From the NCBI GenBank assembly GCA_020536535.1, contig JAHLWZ010000902.1, positions 1 to 53,247 of the forward strand: a DNA stretch of 53,247 nt. The letters are read 5' to 3'. The translations under genes were made by a program, and so were the position numbers. Shown here in pieces: positions 4,846 to 16,560 of this stretch (position 1 is its first letter; each line of letters opens with the position of its first letter). The notes under the pieces are model-generated. The model searched no databases. It worked only from the letters and a program-made list of their open reading frames with translations, and was not told the origin of the DNA. The stretch comes from Pelomyxa schiedti (Eukaryota > Protista > Evosea).

Positions 4846-7694
4846 ATGCAGCGGGCACGACGAGGTGGTAACAACGCAAGAAACTTCACGCGGCCAGTCA
4901 CAAAGGAGATCGTAATAATAAGTGACGGTGACTACGACTGCGACGCCGATGACGAAGATTCGCCCAGAGGCACGCCCGAGCAGAAACATTCACCAGATTC
5001 CATTGTCATAAGTGACGACTCTTGTCCGGAGGAGCCCATACAAGATACCGTTAAAACCGCACGAGGAGGTGTTTCCAGCTCTGCCCACGGCGGGGCCCAA
5101 GAAAGAAGACCCCGGCTCTGTGTACTACGAGCTTATTCGAAAGCTCTCATGCTTCAAGCCCATGAACGTGAAACTCGTCGGACGTCTACTAACCGATTCA
5201 CACTGAAAGCTCCTTCCGTTCCGTGCTCGATTTACCTCAGGCGTATGCAATATGTTGAGCTTCCAGAACCGACTTCCAACCTTCCAAGAACCAGCTTCTC
5301 CACAGCCAAACCTTTGGACACATGTGCCTATGTAGAATACAAGACACGAAATTATGCTGTTGACGACTGGGTTCTATTTTCTCCAAGTGCTGTCCAACGG
5401 GGTCCACATGGCGAAGAACTGGAACGTACTTTCACGGTCAAGCGCTACTGGACAGGGCATATTATGGAGATTATGCCAAGGTCTTCAACCGCAAGTCCTC
5501 TGCTGCGTGTACGGCGGTTTTGGAGCCCTGAAACCACCTTCTGTTACAGGGACGGGGCTTACCCACGTGAACCACGTGAATTGTACATGGGTCATAAGGA
5601 TGACTGGCACTCCTTTGGGTTCTACGAGCAAACTTACATAAGGAAACGATGTTATGTATGAGCCTGTCCACTTTTTGCTACAGAAAAGAAGTGGTAACAC
5701 TATCCTAGGTCAAATACTTCCCCACTCCAAAAGGAGCTGAATTTGATCATTGGGTTGAACAGGATGACCATTTTTTTTATAGATTTGAGTACAACGACCA
5801 GGAGTGAGTGCCTTTTTCACTTTTTTGCTTCTAACCTGCTCTAGTTGTAGCTACACTGATCTATGTGACACTAAACCGAGGGATATCACTCAACCACCTC
5901 GTATCTTGGATCTATTTTGTGGGTGTGGTGGGCTCAGTTATGGTTTTGAGCAGGTATAATTTCTGGGTGGGACGAAAACTTATGACTGTAAAACAGGCAG
6001 GATTCCCTGTTACGTGGGGTGTTGAAATAAATCCTAACATAATGAGAACTTATAGCAAAAACCATCCCAATACCATCCCTATCCTAGGAGATGCTAACTC
6101 ACTGTTAAAGGCTTTAGAAAAGTTGGTGGAAACAACACACAACGGTAACTCATTATTCCTTTTTTGCTATGTCTTACAGAACATAGGCACCAGCCTCAGT
6201 GACCAACAGAAAGAAAGTGACTCCGAAGATCAAGACCCCTGTCTTATTACTCATGTTAGAGATTGGCGCTTCCTCAAACCGCCGGAGGTGGAGTTTCTTG
6301 TTTCTTGGACATCGTCTTCACAACACTTCGAGTCTTGGCTTCCACAGTCTAAAGTGCCTGCTGATAAGATTTCCGAATTCCTGCGTTCCCGCTATAGTAA
6401 CTTCTCACGCAAAGTTGCCGAGAATGCAATGGAGGGACAGGAAATACAATTTAGCAGCGCAGAAGACTCCACCCTTCCATGTATCCCACTCCCAGGCGAA
6501 GTGACAATTCTCATTGGTGGACCCCCTTGCCAAGGGATTAGCCGTAGAAACAAAACGCGATCGTACGACATGCATGACAAGAATAACGCACAGGCTGGTG
6601 TATTTCTCGAATATGCGCGACTATTGCGTCCGGAAGTTGTACTATTTGAGAATGTTCCAGGAATTTTTGATCATGATGCTGCACTGTTGCGGGCGATAAT
6701 GTCAACGTTACTGGCTTTGGGGTACCAAATTCGAGTGGCTCTGCTAAATGCTTGCTCCTTCGGAGTACCCCAGACAAGATGGCGCACCTTTCTCTGGGCT
6801 GCAAGAAGTGGCACAAAACTACCGGAATTTCCTATCGGGACGTACCGACTACTAGACTATAAGGGGTGGGCACATTGCCATTCACAGGTGCCGAAGCGAT
6901 TTCGGAAGTACATCCCATTTCAATTGAAAAAGTATTTCTAAATGCTCATTTTAAGGTTTATTAAATTCCCAAACCCTCGAAACCTGCAAGCTCCTCTAAC
7001 AGTGTACGATGCCGTTTCAGGTTGACCAAATCCAAAACAAACTATAAATACCAACAATTGAGTTTGGCACAGACCTTCCAGAGACCGTTACAGGCCATGG
7101 TCAGGCCCGGTATGCTCACTACTATCTATCCCCATATCAAGCAATGATGCGAATGGGCACCGACACCACAGTCACACTGCACATTGCTAAGCCCGATGTT
7201 ACAAAAGATCCTCCTCCTCCACTTGATCTTCCTCTTTCACTGGATGGTAACCTCCCTGATGGATACCTGCCCCACGTAAGTCCACGCCTTCTTAATGGAC
7301 GAGCTAGTCATATAACATGGGGGCAACCGTTCTGGACAATCACAGGAGATTACAGTACCATGTTGCATCCCCGTGGAAGAAGGACGTTTTCCGTACGCGA
7401 AGTATGCTCTCTCATTGTATCACAGTCAGCCTTGAGACGTTTTTCACCTTTGCTTTTAATAGTGCGCAAGAGCGCAGGGCTTTCCTGACCAGTGGTATTT
7501 TTTCGGCAGTATGACGTTGATGTACCAGCAAATTGGTGTATGACTTGTATGGTTTCTTTTCACTCTAACAACACAACCAGAACGCTATACCCGTGCCACT
7601 AGCTCGTGCCCTAGCCGAGATGTTACAAAAATCTACTCCTTCCCCACCCCCTTCACAGTACCTCCCAGTCACACCACAACAAGAAAACTCCTGA
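4846..7694 (+). CDS. C5 cytosine DNA methyltransferase with N-terminal BAH domain and a chromodomain inside the catalytic domain (chromomethylase-like)
   Basis: Exons approx. 4846-5655, 5709-5803, 5851-5953, 5997-6144, 6187-6907, 6956-7020, 7073-7401, 7463-7537, 7581-7694 form one open frame. BAH (YAVDDWVLF...WTGHIMEI...RRFWSPETT...RELY...FFYRFEY), motif I DLFCGCGGLSYG (~5909), chromo-like segment (~6234-6389), motif IV GGPPCQG (Cys 6528-6530), VI FENV, VIII GVPQTRWRTF, TRD PLTVYDAVSDLP, IX RTFSVRECARAQGFPD, X YQQIGNAIPVPLARAL. Confidence 0.93.
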
Positions 7695-7869: not shown

Positions 7870-8451
7870 ATGACTACCGTCACCGACGCAGCAGCCCCCG
7901 AGACCCCATCGTCCACCACCGTGACGTCCCACGTGCCGTCGTCAGCACCAGCGCCGCAACCTTCAACTCTAACAGTCGCCGTATCCGCAGCACCATCAAC
8001 AACAACAACCGAAACCAGTGTTGGTGCTGCCACTACCGAGGCCGTTATCGAAGGCGCGCACGCCGCTGCGACGGCGAGCACGAGCACGGCCGATCTGATC
8101 CGGCTGTGCCACACGCTGTGGGACGTGGTGCTGCCGCAGACGTGCCGGCACAGCTTCTGCGTCGCCGGGTACGAGCACCTGCTGCGGGACGCCGGGCGGC
8201 TGCGGCCGGGCAGCCCGCCCCCGCCGCCGCCGGCGGCGCCGCGGGACGAGGACGTGGGGGCGGAGGTCTGCATGCTGGGGACGGTGGGCGAGGCGTTCTT
8301 CCCGCTCGCGGGGCTGTGCGCCAGGAACGTGGCGAGGTCGCTGGCGACCTGGGCGTCGGTGTCTGAGTACCTGATGCTGCAGTCCGACTTGGACGACATG
8401 TCTCGCGAAAAGAGAAGACGAAGGAAGCACTTTGGTACGCGTAACTACTAA
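7870..8451 (+). CDS. Probable first exon of the downstream ankyrin-like repeat gene (T/S/A-rich N-terminus followed by a GC-rich segment)
   Basis: 193-aa ORF with strong GC3 bias at 8060-8400, followed by an AT-rich intron-like stretch. The exact splice to 8624+ was not resolved. Confidence 0.5.
   Translation: MTTVTDAAAPETPSSTTVTSHVPSSAPAPQPSTLTVAVSAAPSTTTTETSVGAATTEAVIEGAHAAATASTSTADLIRLCHTLWDVVLPQTCRHSFCVAGYEHLLRDAGRLRPGSPPPPPPAAPRDEDVGAEVCMLGTVGEAFFPLAGLCARNVARSLATWASVSEYLMLQSDLDDMSREKRRRRKHFGTRNY
8060..8400. other. GC/CpG-rich island in a 5' coding exon (one of at least 7 in the window)
   Basis: About 17 CpG in 8101-8220 by eye count. Similar islands at ~27400-27800, 31560-31900, 36550-36840, 40840-41140, 44450-44950 and 50600-50830. 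Confidence 0.8.
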
Positions 8452-8623
8452 TAGTAATAGTAATACTACTACTACTACTACAACCTCGTTGATTGTAGCT
8501 ACTATCTTTGTGTATCTCTTATGCTTGGTGTTGTTGGATTTGTTTTTTTTTGTATGTTTGGCATTAGTTTGCTTGCTTGTTTTTAATAAGTAAACAAGTG
8601 GATGGGGCATTTCTAGTTCTAAT

Positions 8624-10693
8624 TTGAAGTCTCGCAAAGGGCGGGATTTGACACAGCAGGATTGTGGTGAACAGGCTGCACTGTCAATCTTTTCTTCAAT
8701 GGGCTTGGTGAAAATGGTGGGGTGGATGCTGACTCATGGTCAAAATTTACCCAGTGACGGATGGGGTTCAGGCTTCACTGATGCAGTTGTGTTGAACGAG
8801 GCCATCAGGTTAGCCAAACTATAAACGCTTTGAGAAAAGTAAGGCTCTTTCCATAGGAAGGGAAAAGTTAATGTTTTGCGTTACATGATGTCACGGAGTG
8901 GGATCCATCCTTTGACCCTGGCGGAACGCTATGACTTGTTATATCATCTGTGCTTTCGTGGGGATACATCCATGTGTCAGTGGTTAATTGACTCCTGTGG
9001 AATTGCCGGCGATAATCTGCGGCCCCTGAAGAACAAGGCCTTTAGGATTGCCTGTTCCAATGGCCATTTCACAATGGCACAGTGGCTAGCAACCCTATTT
9101 TCCTTAACGCCTGAGGATGTAAGAAGTAAAGAAAACTGCGCACTTAGGAAAAGCTGCAGCGGCGGTTACTTGAATATTGTACAGTGGCTTGTTACTCAAT
9201 TTGGGCTTACCGTGGACGACGCTGTAACTCCCGTCAACGAAATAATCGGTACTATTTATTACGCCTGTAGAGGGGGTCATTTTGACGTTGTCCGGTGGCT
9301 AGTCAGTACTTTCAGTCTTACTAACGTACCCCGCTGCGGTGTTGATGCTTTAATGGGCTCTTCCATAGGAGGGCACCTTGAAATGGCGAAGTGGCTATTT
9401 ACAACTTTCTCAATGGAAAGAGTGGATATTAGTTGTTTAAACGAATCTTGCGCCTATGGACACCTAGAGATGGCCAAGTGGCTATGTGATAAAGTCCCTG
9501 TTAAAAAAACTGATGACTTGAGTGAAATGCTGTACCATGCGTGCCGCGAAGACCACTTTGAGGTGAGGAAACTTGTTTTGCTTTCTTTGCTAACATCGAA
9601 AAATAAGGTGGCCAAATGGCTGCACGAAAACTTTACAATCCCATCAGATTCTCATTTTCTTCCAGAGTGCTTAGAAGCGGCATATAATGCAAAAAATCTC
9701 CCGCTGCTGAAGTGGCTTGTGTCCACCTTCCCAATGCCTACTGCTATTGATCCCGCATCTTATCTCCTGGGATATTTTTGGGATAATGACAACTTTGAGA
9801 TTGTGGAGTGGTTCACACAACATTTTACCTTTCCCCCTGACACAGCGGGTGGATTGGGTACTATACCAGAGCTTCCAATACTGCAATATGCCTTGAAGAC
9901 GTTTTCGATCAGCCATTCCTCACTGCGTCGCACTTTGAGGTCTTTGATGGAAATAGGTGCCCTTGACTGCATTTCATGGCTGAATTCCGTGGAACACTTC
10001 ACGGCTGACGAAATGTTCGCCACTAAGGCAGTCCAGTTATTCCCCCACGTTTTACAGTGGGTGGTCACGCAGTGCCCACCCAGTGACATCATCGCGAGCC
10101 ATTTTTCTGAGTCCCTAATAGGGGTGTGCCAATGTGGGAATACTTGCCTTGCGTCTTGGCTTATAGACCAGTTCCACATGATCCACAAGAAGCCGAACAA
10201 GAAAATTTTGGCTCTATTCAATGATACCATTACAAAGGCGTTTGTCGAAAGTTGTCAAGTGGGCAATATAAAGACTTGTGAGTGGCTTCTGGAGAAGTTT
10301 GGAAACAAGCTAGACAAGAAGAGGGACCAAACCACAGCCTTCAAAGCGGCCTGTGAATATGGACACCTAAGGTTTTCCATAACCAAGAAATCATTACTCT
10401 ATTCTGACAACATCACTAGGCTCGCCCAGCTTCTGAGTGACCGGTTCTCCATCTCCAAGCCCCGGGTTGCAGAAGAGAGCTTCTGTGCATTCCGGCGAGC
10501 ATGCCAGAATTCCCACCTTCATGTGGCCATGTGGCTCACTGAGAAGTACAACCTCACTGCCGATGAGGTGAAGATAACTGAAGCCTTCCTTACTAGAAAG
10601 TGTGCCAAACGGCACAGCTTCACTACACTCCTATGGCTTGAGGAGTACTTCAACATGCACACCACTGCTCCTCCACCAACAGATTCTACCTAA
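8624..10693 (+). CDS. Divergent ankyrin-like repeat protein
   Basis: Repeated units such as AFRIACSNGHFTMAQWL, ALRKSCSGGYLNIVQWL, YYACRGGHFDVVRWL, ESCAYGHLEMAKWL, AFKAACEYGHL and AFRRACQNSHLHVAMWL. Confidence 0.82.
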
Positions 10694-10825: not shown

Positions 10826-12992
10826 ATGAGGGCGTCGACGGCACTTATCAGTTTTGTAGTAGTTTTGTCCTGTTGCATCAGTGGCAGTTATGGGACCGCG
10901 TACTACGTCAACAGCAAGAGCGGCAGTGACAGCCAGGACGGGAAATCAGAGGCCAATGCCTGGGCCACATTGTCAAAGGTGCAGGACTTCATATGGAGCA
11001 GTGATAACTTCCAACCTGGTGATACATTGTATGTTTGAATTTGTTAACTATTTTTTTATTTTTTTTGTCTTCTTCACTAATACCCAACAAAAATGTATTT
11101 GCAGAAACCTAGCAAGGGGGAGTTCTTGGTCTCAAACTACTGGTGAGTCTCCCCTTTCAACTTCACCCGAGAGTGCTTATGTTGTAACATTCTTGTATAG
11201 CACTTTCGATGGAATGCAGTGGAACTTCTGCTAAAAGAATTGTGATCCAACCTTATGGAGATGCCTCAGCTGCAATGCCACTGATTAAGACCCCCAATCC
11301 AGATGGTGACTACCAAGCTGGGATTGTTCTAGCTGGTGATTACCTCACTATAACAGGTGGGCTGTCACGCAAATTTATATATTTTGTGACAAATACAAGG
11401 GATACATATCAGTGATGTAAGATGGGATGGCATTGTGGTGGACCACCATAGAGTTCATGCAATTGTTTCAAATTGTCTCTCGGACAACGTAGGTTAGCAC
11501 GTGCTCACGTGGATCCATTTTCTCAATTTCACACTCTCCGCCAGATTTTTGTGGGATTTCCCTCTACGGAGGCAATTCAACAATTGAAAACTCTGAAGTC
11601 ACAGATTGTGGATTGGGAATATGCATGGAGGGCTCTTTCAACTTGATCAAAAATAACTCACTCCATGACTTGAGAATGGTGTGTCTGAAGTATGTAACCT
11701 TTCATAGCTAAAGGCTACTAAGGCCGTGAATACCAATGATGGAGGGGAGGATGACTACGGTGCTGTGGGAATTAATGTACTTATTTCTCTTGATTTCGCT
11801 TTGTTTTGCTAACACTCAGATAGGTATTTTCTTCTTGGAATGAAATATCTTACAACACAATGGCCAGATGTGTGGCTCCCTCTTACGATTTTGGAGTTGA
11901 TGGCGGTGTTATAGAATTCTATGGCAACGTTTCTCACAATTGTACGAATCTTCAACAAGTCCCGCCAATCATATGAACTCAGATATCCACCATAATTGGG
12001 GTGAATATTGTGATGGATGGGTGGAAATTGGGGCTGCCACATCGGCGGACGTCTGCAGTGACAATACTTTTGCCTACAACGTGGGTATTATGAATGGAGA
12101 TATTGCGATGATTCATAACGGAGGCACTTTTGGACTGAAGGAAACATCGGTATCTACGAATCCTGTTCGGCAATCAGTAAAAACCGGGTTTTTTTTACCA
12201 ACAGGGGCTTTTGTACGAACATAACACATTCTATGAGGCTCACAAAGGAAGCTACCTGTAGTCATGTAACTCGTTTCATATTCGGAACTTAATCTCCTTC
12301 AGGTACAGCCTTATTTCTTGGGATGAAGATCATGCCTCCAATGTACTTACATTCAGAGACAATATCGCAGTTGTTGGTGATTATTGGTAAAAGAGACTTT
12401 TATTCTGTAACAATTCAACCCCAACATTCTGCAGGTACTTCCTGGACAATTCCCGGGACTGGACCATTGGCCACGACCATAACTTATTTCAACTCCTCAA
12501 TTCCTCCACAGAACTTGGGTTCTCTCTTGGAACTGGTAAGTCCTTTTAATTAAGATTTCTTCTCTCAACACTCTCAAGGAGATGCTCAGGTGACTGATGT
12601 TAAGTTTGTTGATCCCCCATCATCAGACTTCCACTTGCAAGATTCCTCACCAGCCGTTGATACTGCTTCCACACCTTCTGAGTATACCCAGGATTTTGAT
12701 GGCAATCCAGTCCCTTGCAATGACATCCCTGGTACCCCTCTCTATTCATACCTCAGTTCTAAAATTCCCTCATGCAGATAAGGGTGCCTATGAGTACTGT
12801 GAAAGTACCACTAGCACGAGTACAATTAGAAGCACAAGCACCAGCCGTTCACATTCCACATCAAACTCAAACTCCGAAACAGAAGAATCCTCACAACACA
12901 AATCGTCCCTCATTCAGTCTTCCTCAGCCTCTTGTGTCTGTGCACTTGGCTTGCCTTTCTCCTTGTTGTTTGTGCTCATACTTTGTCTCTAA
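10826..12992 (+). CDS. Secreted, probably GPI-anchored right-handed beta-helix (pectin-lyase-like) protein, bacterial type
   Basis: Signal peptide MRASTALISFVVVLSCCISGSYG; YYVNSKSGSDSQDGKSEANAWATLSKV...FQPGDTL; parallel beta-helix repeats (NSTIENSEVTDCGLGI, NLIKNNSLHDL, GGEDDYGAVGI); tail DFHLQDSSPAVD...DKGAYEY; S/T linker; hydrophobic C-terminus SSASCVCALGLPFSLLFVLILCL*. Many short introns. Confidence 0.8.
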
Positions 12993-13984: not shown

Positions 13985-14527
13985 ATCATCTCAGCGCACG
14001 TATGCGTACCGCTTCTTGCATTACACTGAATTAATGATGAATGAGAAAGAAGATCTCCCGAAGAGTTAAAACGTGAATTTAGGCAGGATGACACACCGAA
14101 TTGGTGTTGGTGCTGAGGTGGCGTTCTCAGCTCCCCAGACGAAAACAAAAGAAGATCTCAAACTGGAAGTGATGCCGGCGAAAACACGGGGAAGAAGAAA
14201 TCAACATAAAAATAACCTACACGCTAGCGGTGGCCGGAACGAAAGCAAACACGTAGCCCGAGGTAAAGAGTTTGAATGAATGTTACGCAGGTATGCAGTT
14301 GTCGTCAAGATCTGTGTTGGGTAACGTTTTTTTTTCCCTTTTCCCACCAGATGTGACAAAAATCGAGCTCTCGGGTCTGTGCCATTGGAAGTGTGTAAAA
14401 CAGTTTCTTTCTTCTTTTTTCCTTACGTTTTGAAAGGTTGACCTTCAAACGGCCGTTTTTTCTCCAGCGACTACCTTTGTTAAGGGGGAAACTGTGATGG
14501 TCCCTCGGTCTCAGGGTGGCTTTTCTT

Positions 14528-16560
14528 ATGGCGTCGTTGATTCCTGCAAGGTCTTCGACCGCTGTTTCCTTTTCTCTTCTGTACGCCACACATCACAGAG
14601 GTAAATTTCTTTTTTTTCTGCCGCTTTTTCTTAATGTTTCACTTAGATACCGCGTTGCCTACCCCAATCAGCAGGCTGCTGTGCAGTTCAAAGACTTACC
14701 CAATTTCTGCATTGGTAAACTTCTTTCCGATAGTCCAGTTCCAGCATCATCTTGTGAAGACACTGAGTATCACCCTCGTATTGCATCCTGTACTAACGGG
14801 AAAAAAAGGACTGAAAGATCCCCTGGTTGCTCAGTAAACATTGGAGACTTGCATAAAGTTGTTTTTCTTCCCCGAAGTGGAATTGAACCTGGGTGTTTGG
14901 TTATTGTTCCCCGATCTAGGGGAGGGTTCACATATGGCCGTGTTGTATCTGAGCACCAAACTTTATGTAGAGAAGAGCCCTCTTGCCCTCATACTGTAAT
15001 GGGGTATGCATGCCTTCAATAATAAAAACAGGTTCCCTTATTTTTTCAAATAGAGCTCGTGTTTTACTATCACCACCCAATACCAATAATCCCGTACGAA
15101 AGGACTTACCACTGTGCAGCATTGGGGTTATACCCTTGGATCATGAATTAGATCATGTTACGCAAACCACAAAATACTGCTCGCCTCATTTACCAACTGC
15201 TACAATACCCACTGGCAATAGCACAAGCCCTCCTAATAGTGACGGAACATCCCCAAGCAGTAGCTCTAGTCCCAGTCCAAGTTCACAGAGTGGCCCTGCC
15301 AGCAACCCTTCGAACTCCCCTCAATTTACTGCATCTGATAAGCTGCATTTAATAGCCCAACCACCCATTGGGTTTCAACCTCATTCGCCCGTGACTTCGG
15401 CACGTGAAAGCCTTAGAAATGGAGTTCTTCACGTGCAACCTGGTGTGACTGATTCTAGTAAAGGTGGAGAAAGTGATGATAGTGAAGCTGATGATAGTGG
15501 TGAAGTGGTGCTAATAGGGGAAGAAGGGGAGGAAGTAGTTCTAAGCACAAGCCCAAATGACAGGAACAATTATCCAGAGGTACAACTTCTCACATGTGTC
15601 TAACCGTTTTTCACTTATAAAAACCAGACTGAGTACGCTGCGCATCAAAATTCTGTGATTGCAAATCCGACGGCTACATCGAGTACAGCAACAGAAGTTG
15701 CCTCGACAGGTGCCACGTACCCCGTAGAAAATCCAGTTAGACTTGCTCCTCTACCAGACCAATCCTCCACACGAGCTCAGGCACATGCACCTCAGTCCAA
15801 AAGTGCACCTGTGATTTCACTACCTGAAATCTCTCGGGCAAAAACTAAACCTTATATAGTACTGGATGGGCCCAACATTGCTTGTGTAAGATCCCTCCAG
15901 TTCTGCTTGAATCTAATCCATTGCACAGAAACACTCAAAGAAGTCAAATTTCTCTGCGGCTGGCCTCAAGATAGCAGTTGAGCATTTAAGCAAGGCAGGA
16001 TTTGAGCCTATTGCGTTTGTACCTGAACACTATGTCTCCAGAAAGCAGTCACATGTGGTGGATCCTTCCCACCAAGAAGCTGGTGTGGCAGTGCTAACTC
16101 TCAAAGATTTCATGGTTTCCATTTTCCCTCCAAAAATTCGCGTCTCCTGACCGGTTTTTCAGCCCGTCGTTGACGATACTGCAGTTCTGTCAAGGCTCAT
16201 ACATCAAAAGAAGGTGGTTTTGACTCCACCACAGGTGAAATTTCCGCTACCTTATATAAGCGATGGCCGTATTCCTTCCGGATGCTAAATCCTGAGCAGG
16301 ACCTTGACTCCAGTTACTTCATCAATTTTGCTCGGATGCACGACGCTTGTATAGTTACGAACAACAACTTCTCAGATTTCATTGCCAAGCAGGAAGGGTC
16401 CAACAAACAAATAACACAGGTTCCGACTAGATTTCAACACTAACTCCTTCCCCTCCTCTTTAACAAAGAACTTTTCTCACAGGAGTGGTTGGACAAGCAC
16501 TGTCTTCCTTTCAAGTTCAACAAAAACACATTCCAACTCCTCAGGAAGCCCAAACCGTAA
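14528..16560 (+). CDS. NYN/PIN-fold RNase of the Regnase (RNase_Zc3h12a)-like family with a long N-terminal extension
   Basis: C-terminal exons: KPYIVLDGPNIA, AVEHFKQAGFEPIAFVPEHY, VLTPPQ|DLDSSYFINFARMHDACIVTNNNFSDF, EWLDKHCLPFKFNKNTF. N-terminal part has PGCLVIVPRSRGGFTYGRV and S/P-rich linkers. Confidence 0.75.

What the first reader, a model, noticed from the sequence alone, without database searches (positions are those of the whole stretch)
4846..7694. Chromomethylase-architecture DNA methyltransferase (BAH + chromodomain inserted between motifs I and IV) in an apparently non-plant protist
Seen: a complete, spliceable, intron-containing C5-MTase with motifs I, IV (PCQ), VI, VIII, IX and X intact and one N-terminal BAH domain. 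Between motif I and motif IV lies DPCLITHVRDWRFLKPPEVEFLVSWTSSSQHFESWLPQSKVPADKISEFL, which fits the chromodomain pattern (I..V.D.R...EFLV.W......SW.P...V...I.EF), then LPGEVTILIGGPPCQG. Established: BAH + chromodomain embedded at this position defines plant CHROMOMETHYLASES (CMT1-3/ZMET2), which read H3K9me; DNMT1/MET1/Dim-2 lack the insertion. Inference: the neighbours (TRIM RBCC ligase, divergent ankyrin family, tiny introns) look amoebozoan or protist rather than plant. This would then be a CMT-like histone-guided methylation system outside green plants, through ancient origin, HGT or convergent insertion. Its host-style introns argue against contamination.
Basis: partly seen in the sequence, partly recalled or inferred. 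Interest (0 to 1): 0.93.

Follow-up and report, generated by a model that had tools for sequence, protein, structure and literature searches.

The report
Chromomethylase-like DNA methyltransferase in an amoeba
The anaerobic amoeba Pelomyxa schiedti has an intact, intron-bearing DNA cytosine methyltransferase gene built like a plant chromomethylase (BAH domain in front, chromodomain spliced into the catalytic domain); it belongs to an amoeba-specific clade, so this layout is not confined to plants, although this copy has lost most residues that would read methylated histone.

Summary
Window 4846-7694 (+) is a nine-exon gene of Pelomyxa schiedti (GCA_020536535.1, contig JAHLWZ010000902.1; GenBank KAH3744754.1, auto-named 'Chromo domain/shadow').

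What it encodes:
- A C5 DNA methyltransferase with motifs I, IV, VI, VIII, IX and X intact.
- A divergent N-terminal BAH domain.
- A chromodomain in the loop before motif IV, the same loop as in plant CMT/ZMET2. ZMET2 is the best solved match by sequence and by fold.

Where it sits:
- It does not fall inside the CMT clade. It belongs to a well-supported Archamoebae clade: two Pelomyxa paralogs, Mastigamoeba, Mastigella and environmental sequences.
- Recent transfer from land plants is rejected (AU p 3e-6).
- A sister position to CMT gets 90/95 support in one tree and is unresolved in the other.
- The BAH and chromodomain sequences show no special kinship to those of CMT. Single origin and convergent assembly remain about equally likely.

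In both Pelomyxa paralogs the methyl-lysine cages are degenerate (chromodomain C/W/S, BAH W/R/W). The Mastigamoeba ortholog keeps both cages. H3K9me guidance is therefore plausible for the family and doubtful for this copy.

I found no paper reporting this; a 2025 survey counts the Mastigamoeba genes as DNMT1. The scan already noted the paralog on other DNA (s1-377884).

The parts
4846..7694 (+). Whole gene. Exons: 4846-5655, 5709-5803, 5845-5953, 5997-6144, 6187-6907, 6956-7020, 7073-7401, 7463-7537, 7581-7694. Product is 821 aa in my model.
   Evidence: The model agrees with GenBank KAH3744754.1 except at two places listed as separate parts.
5353..5801 (+). BAH domain (aa about 170-301), split by intron 5656-5708.
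   Evidence: Pfam BAH E 0.07 on exon 1. Alignment with Mastigamoeba P0004, ZMET2 and other BAH domains. The family profile hits SHL, ORC1b and BAHCC1 BAH structures.
5481..5549 (+). 69-nt in-frame stretch that the GenBank model removes as an intron. It encodes SSTASPLLRVRRFWSPETTFCYR, the BAH strand that carries the cage positions.
   Evidence: The segment is conserved in paralog P0002 (PLKIRRLWFPRYTFC) and in Mastigamoeba (WFLARWLWHPSETL).
5903..5947 (+). Motif I (ILDLFCGCGGLSYGF), the AdoMet-binding loop.
6234..6407 (+). Embedded chromodomain (aa 404-461): three strands plus a C-terminal helix. Cage positions are C406, W428 and S431.
6507..6542 (+). Motif IV (ILIGGPPCQGIS) with the catalytic Cys.
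6636..6665 (+). Motif VI (VVLFENVPGI).
6759..6800 (+). Motif VIII (FGVPQTRWRTFLWA).
6801..7380 (+). Short target-recognition region. It has introns at 6908-6955 and 7021-7072. It lacks the long TRD loops of CMT and DNMT1.
   Evidence: Alignment A1.
7381..7489 (+). Motif IX (RTFSVRE|CARAQGFPD), split by intron 7402-7462.
7526..7604 (+). Motif X (QQIG|NAIPVPLA), split by intron 7538-7580.

Best explanation
This is a functional-looking nuclear gene of Pelomyxa schiedti for a C5 cytosine DNA methyltransferase of the DNMT1/CMT superfamily. An N-terminal BAH domain precedes the catalytic domain. An HP1-type chromodomain is inserted in the surface loop between the helix after motif III and the motif IV strand. 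This is the domain order and insertion loop of plant chromomethylases.

The gene belongs to a distinct clade found in free-living Archamoebae (Pelomyxa, two copies; Mastigamoeba; Mastigella) and in a few environmental eukaryotes. That clade lies outside the CMT clade and is at most its sister.

The inferred mechanism has three parts:
- The catalytic core methylates DNA cytosines. This is inferred from intact motifs.
- The BAH and chromodomain flank the core and dock or regulate the enzyme on chromatin, as in ZMET2. This is inferred from the predicted structures.
- In Mastigamoeba both aromatic cages are intact, so methyl-lysine reading (most likely H3K9me) is expected. In both Pelomyxa paralogs the cages are degenerate, so these copies probably keep the domains as scaffold or for a different ligand.

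Sequence context (CG, CHG or other) cannot be inferred. The TRD is short and unlike that of CMT.
For: Host and gene:
- GenBank KAH3744754.1 lies on a 53247-bp contig of GCA_020536535.1.
- The gene has eight GT-AG introns of 41-61 nt.

Catalytic domain:
- Pfam DNA_methylase E 6.8e-54, with all motifs present.
- Best PDB sequence hit is ZMET2 at E 2.8e-26, ahead of MET1 at 1.7e-20 and DNMT1 at about 2e-18.

Structure:
- AlphaFold model of residues 285-796: pLDDT 83.4, pTM 0.86. The insert folds as strands 98-107, 113-120 and 125-131 plus helix 137-161.
- Foldseek's top hits are ZMET2 structures, E 3.6e-35.
- VIA-align gives ZMET2 Z 42.1 with 438 residues aligned, against about 377 for DNMT1. The extra residues match the size of the chromodomain.
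- The full-length Mastigamoeba ortholog model aligns to ZMET2 from the BAH to the C-terminus: Z 37.3, 491 aligned, model 70-738 against chain 169-867.

Chromodomain identity:
- The family insert profile hits HP1/CBX chromodomains at E 3.4e-19.
- hhalign against the CMT chromodomain profile gives 98.2% probability.

Clade:
- The Archamoebae clade has 98/98 and 99/99 support in two trees.
- Members are named from EukProt and NCBI.

Cages: alignments, with ZMET2 numbering checked against C517 in PMC9256654.
Against: - No experimental evidence of 5mC, of enzyme activity or of histone binding exists for any archamoeba in the literature I could search.
- For this protein alone, Pfam Chromo and BAH are below threshold.
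- The predicted domain arrangement may be biased, because CMT sequences were in the alignment given to AlphaFold.
- The degenerate cages and short TRD leave open that the Pelomyxa copies have a changed or reduced function.
- Transcription and the exact splicing, especially of 5481-5549, were not checked against RNA data.
Confidence: 0.75

Rival explanations
1. Single origin. The embedded chromodomain and the BAH were inherited from a common ancestor shared with plant, algal and haptophyte CMTs. That ancestor could be an ancient eukaryotic paralog of DNMT1 lost in most lineages, or the gene could have moved by a very old eukaryote-to-eukaryote transfer before green-lineage CMTs diversified.
For: - The insertion loop and domain order are the same.
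- ZMET2 is the best PDB hit by sequence and by fold.
- With all insert columns removed, the Archamoebae clade is sister to the CMT clade at 90/95 support and in 92% of bootstrap trees.
- The AU test does not reject Archamoebae plus CMT on the other alignment (p 0.34, delta lnL 3.4).
- In BLAST, CMT-clade and Archamoebae-clade proteins are often each other's second-best group.
Against: - The first tree (78 rows, HMM-based alignment) leaves the backbone unresolved.
- AU does not reject CMT plus DNMT1/MET1 with Archamoebae excluded (p 0.215), nor Archamoebae plus DNMT1/MET1 (p 0.12).
- The CMT chromodomain profile scores MPP8, CDY and HP1 at 47-66 bits but archamoebal chromodomains at only 7-32 bits. 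The reverse comparison behaves the same way.
- The CMT BAH HMM scores human DNMT1 BAH1 at 36.8 bits, Mastigamoeba at 7.3 bits and Pelomyxa not at all.
- The archamoebal BAH profile hits SHL, ORC1 and BAHCC1, not ZMET2 or DNMT1.
Confidence: 0.45
2. Convergent assembly. An archamoebal DNMT1-superfamily enzyme independently captured an HP1-like chromodomain in the same permissive loop, and perhaps its BAH as well. The resemblance to CMT would then be analogy.
For: - Neither the chromodomain nor the BAH shows specific similarity to its CMT counterpart.
- Two clade members lack the chromodomain: Mastigella P0072 and Mastigamoeba P0104. In the first tree they branch outside the chromodomain-bearing subclade, which has 83/58 support.
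- One environmental member has two tandem chromodomains in the loop, which shows the loop is plastic.
- The TRD is much shorter than in CMT and DNMT1.
Against: - The core is sister to CMT at 90/95 support in the second tree.
- In that tree P0104 nests among chromodomain-bearing members, which implies loss rather than late gain.
- Independent insertion of the same domain type into the same loop, combined with the same N-terminal domain type, is improbable a priori.
Confidence: 0.45
3. Recent horizontal transfer of a land-plant CMT gene into Pelomyxa, or plant contamination of the assembly.
For: The architecture matches. With the Mastigamoeba query, plant CMTs dominate the named hits across 97-100% of the query.
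Against: - AU rejects Archamoebae plus land-plant CMTs as one clade (p 3.4e-6, delta lnL 103).
- Identity to CMTs is only 25-30%.
- The gene has two paralogs and orthologs in three archamoebal genera.
- Its short introns are host-like, and it lies in a 53-kb contig of uniform composition.
Confidence: 0.01
4. The Pelomyxa copies are catalytically dead or repurposed, for example as an RNA methyltransferase or a chromatin-binding pseudoenzyme.
For: - Both reader cages are degenerate.
- The catalytic-loop residues differ from ZMET2: F523-N524-R525-Y526 becomes R-N-K-T.
- One Mastigamoeba paralog (P0104) has lost the PCQ motif.
Against: - All catalytic motifs, including PCQ, ENV, QxRxR and GNAxP, are intact in both Pelomyxa paralogs.
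- The two paralogs keep about 52-60% identity across the domain, including an identical chromodomain helix SEFLRSRYSNFS.
Confidence: 0.1

Closest known systems
Plant chromomethylases (CMT1-3; maize ZMET2; PDB 4FSX, 4FT4, 7UBU)
   Same: - A single N-terminal BAH.
- A chromodomain embedded in the loop before motif IV.
- A DNMT1-type catalytic core.
- ZMET2 is the best solved match by sequence (E 2.8e-26) and by fold (Foldseek E 3.6e-35; VIA Z 42.1, 438 residues aligned).
- The core is possibly the sister clade (90/95).
   Different: - It lies outside the CMT clade, which itself has 100/99 support.
- Identity is only 25-30%.
- The chromodomain cage is C/W/S instead of F/W/Y. The central Trp of the BAH cage is replaced by Arg.
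- The catalytic loop and TRD loops that give CHG and 5mC recognition in ZMET2 are not conserved, and the TRD is much shorter.
- The BAH and chromodomain sequences have no special similarity to those of CMT.
DNMT1 / MET1 maintenance methyltransferases
   Same: - The same superfamily of catalytic domain. VIA Z is 41 for mouse DNMT1, tied with ZMET2.
- A BAH precedes the MTase domain.
- The 2025 survey files the Mastigamoeba genes under DNMT1 (PMC12344493, Table S1).
   Different: - There is no RFD/RFTS domain, no CXXC and only one BAH.
- It lies outside the DNMT1/MET1 clade, which has 100/98 support.
- It carries an embedded chromodomain that DNMT1 and MET1 lack.
- Most clade members keep the 'PLxDxxN' segment after motif IV, where DNMT1 and MET1 have a two-residue deletion.
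Haptophyte and chlorophyte 'CMT-like' DNMTs (e.g. Emiliania huxleyi)
   Same: These are non-land-plant relatives of CMT. They are discussed in the literature as possible products of eukaryote-to-eukaryote transfer (PMC12344493).
   Different: - They fall inside the CMT clade by phylogeny. The amoebal genes do not.
- The Emiliania cluster has an RFD and no detectable chromodomain. The amoebal genes have the chromodomain.
Fungal DIM-2
   Same: A DNMT1-superfamily enzyme with a BAH, coupled to H3K9me heterochromatin.
   Different: - DIM-2 reads H3K9me3 indirectly, through a separate HP1 protein (PDB 9BAQ title). Here an HP1-like chromodomain is built into the enzyme.
- It belongs to a different clade.

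Membership tests
Plant CHROMOMETHYLASE (CMT) | C5-MTase catalytic motifs I, IV (PCQ), VI (ENV), VIII (QxRxR), IX and X | tested here: met
   Pfam PF00145 E 6.8e-54. Motifs were located in the window and aligned.
Plant CHROMOMETHYLASE (CMT) | Chromodomain embedded in the MTase domain between motif I and motif IV | tested here: met
   - Same loop as ZMET2 in the alignment.
- AlphaFold gives three strands plus a helix.
- CBX5 E 6e-5.
- Family profile E 3.4e-19 to HP1.
- hhalign to the CMT chromodomain gives 98.2% probability.
- Pfam on this protein alone is subthreshold, E 0.03.
Plant CHROMOMETHYLASE (CMT) | Single N-terminal BAH domain | tested here: met
   - Pfam BAH E 0.07 on exon 1.
- The ortholog P0004 scores E 4.3e-6.
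- The family profile hits BAH structures, with SHL at E 1.2e-5.
- The P0004 model aligns with ZMET2 from residue 169.
- The domain is divergent: the CMT-BAH HMM does not detect it.
Plant CHROMOMETHYLASE (CMT) | Phylogenetic placement of the MTase core inside the CMT clade | tested here: not met
   The CMT clade (land plants, Chlorokybus, chlorophytes, haptophytes) has 100/99 support and excludes the Archamoebae clade. The Archamoebae clade is sister at best (90/95; unresolved).
Plant CHROMOMETHYLASE (CMT) | Aromatic cages for H3K9me2 in the chromodomain (ZMET2 F441/W466/Y469) and the BAH (Y203/W224/F226) | tested here: not met
   - Pelomyxa A has C/W/S in the chromodomain and W/R/W in the BAH.
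- Pelomyxa B has W/L at the second and third chromodomain positions, with the first position unaligned or non-aromatic, and W/R/W in the BAH.
- Mastigamoeba keeps Y/W/Y and W/W/W.
- The identity of the ZMET2 cage residues is from my memory of Du et al. 2012. Residue types and numbering were checked against the sequence and against C517 in PMC9256654.
Plant CHROMOMETHYLASE (CMT) | CHG-specifying catalytic-loop and TRD residues (ZMET2 F523, N524, R525, Y526, Y776, R804, H808) | tested here: not met
   The catalytic loop reads R-N-K-T in place of F-N-R-Y. The TRD is shortened, with no alignable counterparts of TRD loops I and II.
Plant CHROMOMETHYLASE (CMT) | H3K9me2 binding and non-CG (CHG/CHH) methylation activity | not testable with these tools
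   This needs biochemistry or methylome data.
DNMT1 / MET1 | RFD (RFTS) domain and two BAH domains upstream of the MTase domain | tested here: not met
   Pfam finds no DNMT1-RFD and only one BAH-like region.
DNMT1 / MET1 | Placement inside the DNMT1/MET1 clade | tested here: inconclusive
   It lies outside the 100/98 clade in the ML trees. AU does not reject grouping them as sisters (p 0.12, delta lnL 22).
HP1-type chromodomain | Three-stranded antiparallel sheet packed against a C-terminal helix, with a sequence profile match | tested here: met
HP1-type chromodomain | Three-residue aromatic cage | tested here: not met
   Only the central Trp (EFLVSW) is retained.

The most novel reading that the evidence does not exclude
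The BAH-plus-embedded-chromodomain methyltransferase arose once, early in eukaryote evolution, before Amoebozoa and the green lineage separated. Direct coupling of DNA methylation to histone-lysine methylation by a chromomethylase-type enzyme would then be ancestral rather than a plant invention. Archamoebae (with Mastigamoeba keeping both reader cages) and plants would be its surviving carriers.
Probability: 0.22. Interest if true: 0.85.

Novelty: new variant of a known kind. Interest (0 to 1): 0.62.

Why it matters
Chromomethylases are treated as a green-lineage innovation. The latest broad survey calls the chromodomain an addition 'in plant CMTs' and files the Mastigamoeba genes under DNMT1 (PMC12344493).

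An amoebozoan clade with the same three-domain layout leads to one of two conclusions:
- The chromomethylase design is much older or more mobile than thought.
- Evolution hit on the same solution twice, by wiring a methyl-histone reader into the same loop of a DNA methyltransferase.

Either way it gives a non-plant system in which to test how reader domains steer DNA methylation. Mastigamoeba has intact cages. Pelomyxa is a natural 'cage-dead' variant. It also predicts that free-living Archamoebae have nuclear 5mC, which has not been examined.

Tried and rejected
- **Pfam on single exons.** This gave only subthreshold Chromo and BAH hits. Family profiles and structure prediction were needed.
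- **Bacterial 700-770-aa hits.** They ranked above plant CMTs in two searches. They are tandem double methyltransferases whose two domains add up in score, not close kin.
- **First run of the MAFFT-based tree.** It had kept about 24 chromodomain columns, so I discarded it and rebuilt with the whole insert removed.
- **Heterolobosean insert.** The Acrasis and environmental insert in the same loop is not detectably a chromodomain (hhalign probability 0.9%).
- **Full-length fold of my corrected protein.** I could not fold it, because a spliced protein has no reference. I used the GenBank protein from residue 285 and the Mastigamoeba ortholog instead.
- **H3K9 methyltransferase or HP1 genes in Pelomyxa.** I could not look for them.
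- **Du et al. 2012 (ZMET2 cages).** The paper is not held. The cage residues are from memory, checked against sequence numbering.
- **Literature searches.** Searches for chromomethylase or DNMT with Archamoebae, Pelomyxa or Mastigamoeba found nothing relevant.
Full report
**Where the window comes from**

An HMMER search of 1.84 billion representative proteins used the longest ORF of the locus (5997-6938). It returned a 796-aa protein, 99% identical. That protein is GenBank KAH3744754.1, 'Chromo domain/shadow [Pelomyxa schiedti]', seen on one contig of 53247 bases, the length of this window. A look-up by exact sequence gave the record as GCA_020536535.1, JAHLWZ010000902.1, with the gene at 4846-7694. 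The host is therefore an anaerobic archamoeba (Amoebozoa), not a plant or alga. Earlier scan notes had suggested this organism, and one search confirms it.

**Gene model**

Three-frame translation and splice-site inspection give nine exons and eight GT-AG introns of 41-61 nt:
- 4846-5655
- 5709-5803
- 5845-5953
- 5997-6144
- 6187-6907
- 6956-7020
- 7073-7401
- 7463-7537
- 7581-7694

The GenBank model differs in two places. It uses an acceptor six bases downstream at exon 3. It also removes 5481-5549 as an extra in-frame intron.

Those 23 codons (SSTASPLLRVRRFWSPETTFCYR) are conserved in the paralog (PLKIRRLWFPRYTFC) and in Mastigamoeba (WFLARWLWHPSETL). They form the BAH strand that carries the cage positions. 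I therefore treat them as coding, which gives an 821-aa product. RNA data were not available to settle this.

**Checking the observation**

All C5-MTase motifs are present with their key residues: FCGCGG, PPCQG, ENV, QTRWR, RECARAQGFPD and GNAIP. Pfam DNA_methylase scores E 6.8e-54.

The stretch between motif I and motif IV is 177 residues, against 82 in human DNMT1. For this protein alone, chromodomain evidence from sequence is modest:
- Pfam Chromo E 0.03, below threshold.
- Human CBX5 chromodomain E 6e-5 in a PDB sequence search.

Three further lines settle it:
- A profile of the inserts from six family members hits HP1/CBX chromodomains at E 3.4e-19.
- hhalign of that profile against plant CMT chromodomains gives 98.2% probability.
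- An AlphaFold model of residues 285-796 (pLDDT 83.4, pTM 0.86) folds the insert as three strands and a helix, with pLDDT 76-89.

The BAH is divergent. Pfam gives E 0.07 on exon 1. It aligns with the Mastigamoeba ortholog, which scores Pfam BAH E 4e-6. A family profile hits the BAH domains of SHL, ORC1b and BAHCC1.

**Resemblance to chromomethylases**

ZMET2 is the best solved relative by sequence, at E 2.8e-26, against 1.7e-20 for MET1 and about 2e-18 for DNMT1. It is also best by Foldseek, at E 3.6e-35. VIA-align gives Z 42.1 with 438 aligned residues for ZMET2, and Z 41 with about 377 for DNMT1. The roughly 60 extra aligned residues match the chromodomain.

A full-length model of the Mastigamoeba ortholog (pLDDT 75.7) aligns with ZMET2 from the BAH to the C-terminus (Z 37.3, 491 residues). 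One caveat applies: CMT sequences were in the alignments given to AlphaFold, so the relative placement of the domains may be borrowed.

**The family**

The nearest proteins are:
- A Pelomyxa paralog: KAH3766369.1, auto-named 'CMT-type DNA-methyltransferase', 52% identical.
- Two Mastigamoeba balamuthi proteins.
- A Mastigella eilhardi transcript.
- Several unnamed environmental sequences.

They form a clade with 98/98 and 99/99 support.

The chromodomain is present in both Pelomyxa copies, in Mastigamoeba P0004 and in the environmental members. P0003 has two in tandem. It is absent from Mastigella P0072 and from Mastigamoeba P0104, which has also lost the PCQ motif.

**Origin**

Tree 1 used 78 rows and 363 HMM-aligned core columns under LG+C20. 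It gives strong clades for Archamoebae, for CMT (land plants, Chlorokybus, chlorophytes, haptophytes; 100/99), for DNMT1/MET1 (100/98) and for fungi. The backbone is unresolved.

Tree 2 used 58 rows from a MAFFT alignment, with the whole insert region removed and 422 columns kept. It puts Archamoebae sister to CMT at 90/95 support, and in 92% of bootstrap trees.

| AU test (grouping forced) | p | delta lnL |
|---|---|---|
| Archamoebae + land-plant CMT only | 3.4e-6 | 103 |
| Archamoebae + all CMT | 0.34 | 3.4 |
| Archamoebae + DNMT1/MET1 | 0.12 | 22 |
| CMT + DNMT1/MET1, Archamoebae excluded | 0.215 | 9.5 |

Recent transfer from land plants is therefore rejected. Sisterhood with CMT is favoured but not established.

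The accessory domains point the other way:
- The CMT chromodomain profile scores MPP8, CDY and HP1 at 47-66 bits, but the amoebal chromodomains at 7-32 bits.
- The amoebal profile scores HP1 at 58-71 bits and CMT chromodomains at 25-37 bits.
- A CMT BAH HMM scores human DNMT1 BAH1 at 36.8 bits, Mastigamoeba at 7.3 bits and Pelomyxa not at all.

I rate single origin and convergent assembly as about equally likely.

**How it probably works**

Intact catalytic motifs in both Pelomyxa paralogs predict an active DNA cytosine methyltransferase. The paralogs also share an identical chromodomain helix, SEFLRSRYSNFS. Activity is an inference.

In ZMET2 the chromodomain and BAH both bind H3K9me2, and the BAH-H3 contact allosterically activates the enzyme (PMC9256654). 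At the ZMET2 cage positions:

| Protein | Chromodomain (ZMET2 F441/W466/Y469) | BAH (ZMET2 Y203/W224/F226) |
|---|---|---|
| Mastigamoeba P0004 | Y/W/Y | W/W/W |
| Pelomyxa A (this window) | C/W/S | W/R/W |
| Pelomyxa B | first position non-aromatic or unaligned, then W/L | W/R/W |

The BAH Trp that is replaced by Arg corresponds to CMT3 W148. Mutating W148 to Ala abolishes H3K9me2 binding (PMC9256654).

Methyl-histone guidance is therefore a reasonable prediction for Mastigamoeba. It is unlikely in the canonical form for this window's protein.

Target sequence context cannot be inferred:
- The ZMET2 catalytic-loop residues F523-N524-R525-Y526 read R-N-K-T here.
- The TRD is far shorter, with no counterpart of the loops that recognise the +2 guanine and the template 5mC.

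**Novelty**

GenBank's automatic names already flag a chromo domain and 'CMT-type'. I found no paper that links chromomethylases or DNMT architecture with Archamoebae.

The 2025 survey in Mol Biol Evol lists Mastigamoeba with four DNMT1 genes and no CMT. It describes the chromo domain as an addition in plant CMTs. A 2023 eLife survey calls CMT plant-specific.

The scan has already reported the paralog on another contig with the same reading (s1-377884). The present work agrees with it and adds four things:
- The cage analysis.
- The rejection of recent plant transfer.
- The reciprocal domain-profile tests.
- The gene-model correction.

Noticed in passing
window 5481-5549: GenBank model KAH3744754.1 removes this 69-nt in-frame stretch as an intron. 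It encodes a BAH strand that is conserved in the paralog and in Mastigamoeba. This is probably an annotation error or an alternative splice. Removing it hides the BAH from Pfam.
   Followed up: partly
P0104 (Mastigamoeba balamuthi EP00727_P006930): This second Mastigamoeba member of the clade lacks both the chromodomain and the PPCQ catalytic motif, reading VPPEALNS in its place. It is either a pseudoenzyme or a faulty gene model.
   Followed up: partly
P0004 residues about 391-416 (Mastigamoeba ortholog): AlphaFold predicts an extra three-stranded beta module directly after the chromodomain helix, inside the same insert. Pelomyxa and the CMTs have no such module.
   Followed up: no
L002:1331-3472 (Logan SRR24962750 contig, protein P0003): This environmental clade member has two tandem chromodomains in the insert. 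The gene is intronless and sits on a tightly packed eukaryotic contig next to a Syja_N phosphatase gene. The organism is unknown.
   Followed up: partly
P0408 / P0118 (Emiliania huxleyi cluster): The haptophyte 'CMT-like' enzyme falls in the CMT clade by phylogeny. It carries a DNMT1-RFD domain and has no detectable chromodomain. 'CMT' outside plants is therefore defined by the tree and not by architecture.
   Followed up: partly
P0138 (Acrasis kona) and P0020: These heterolobosean-type DNMTs have an insert of about 65 residues in the same loop before motif IV. It is not detectably a chromodomain (hhalign probability 0.9%).
   Followed up: yes
P0271-P0284, P0155, P0297 and similar (bacterial, 700-770 aa): These are tandem fusions of two complete C5-MTase domains. 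Their summed scores push them above true relatives in whole-protein searches.
   Followed up: yes
window 7870-10693, 10826-12992 and 14280-16560: The downstream neighbours in the GenBank annotation are an ankyrin-repeat protein, a beta-helix protein and an RNase_Zc3h12a-domain protein. All are on the + strand and all contain introns.
   Followed up: no
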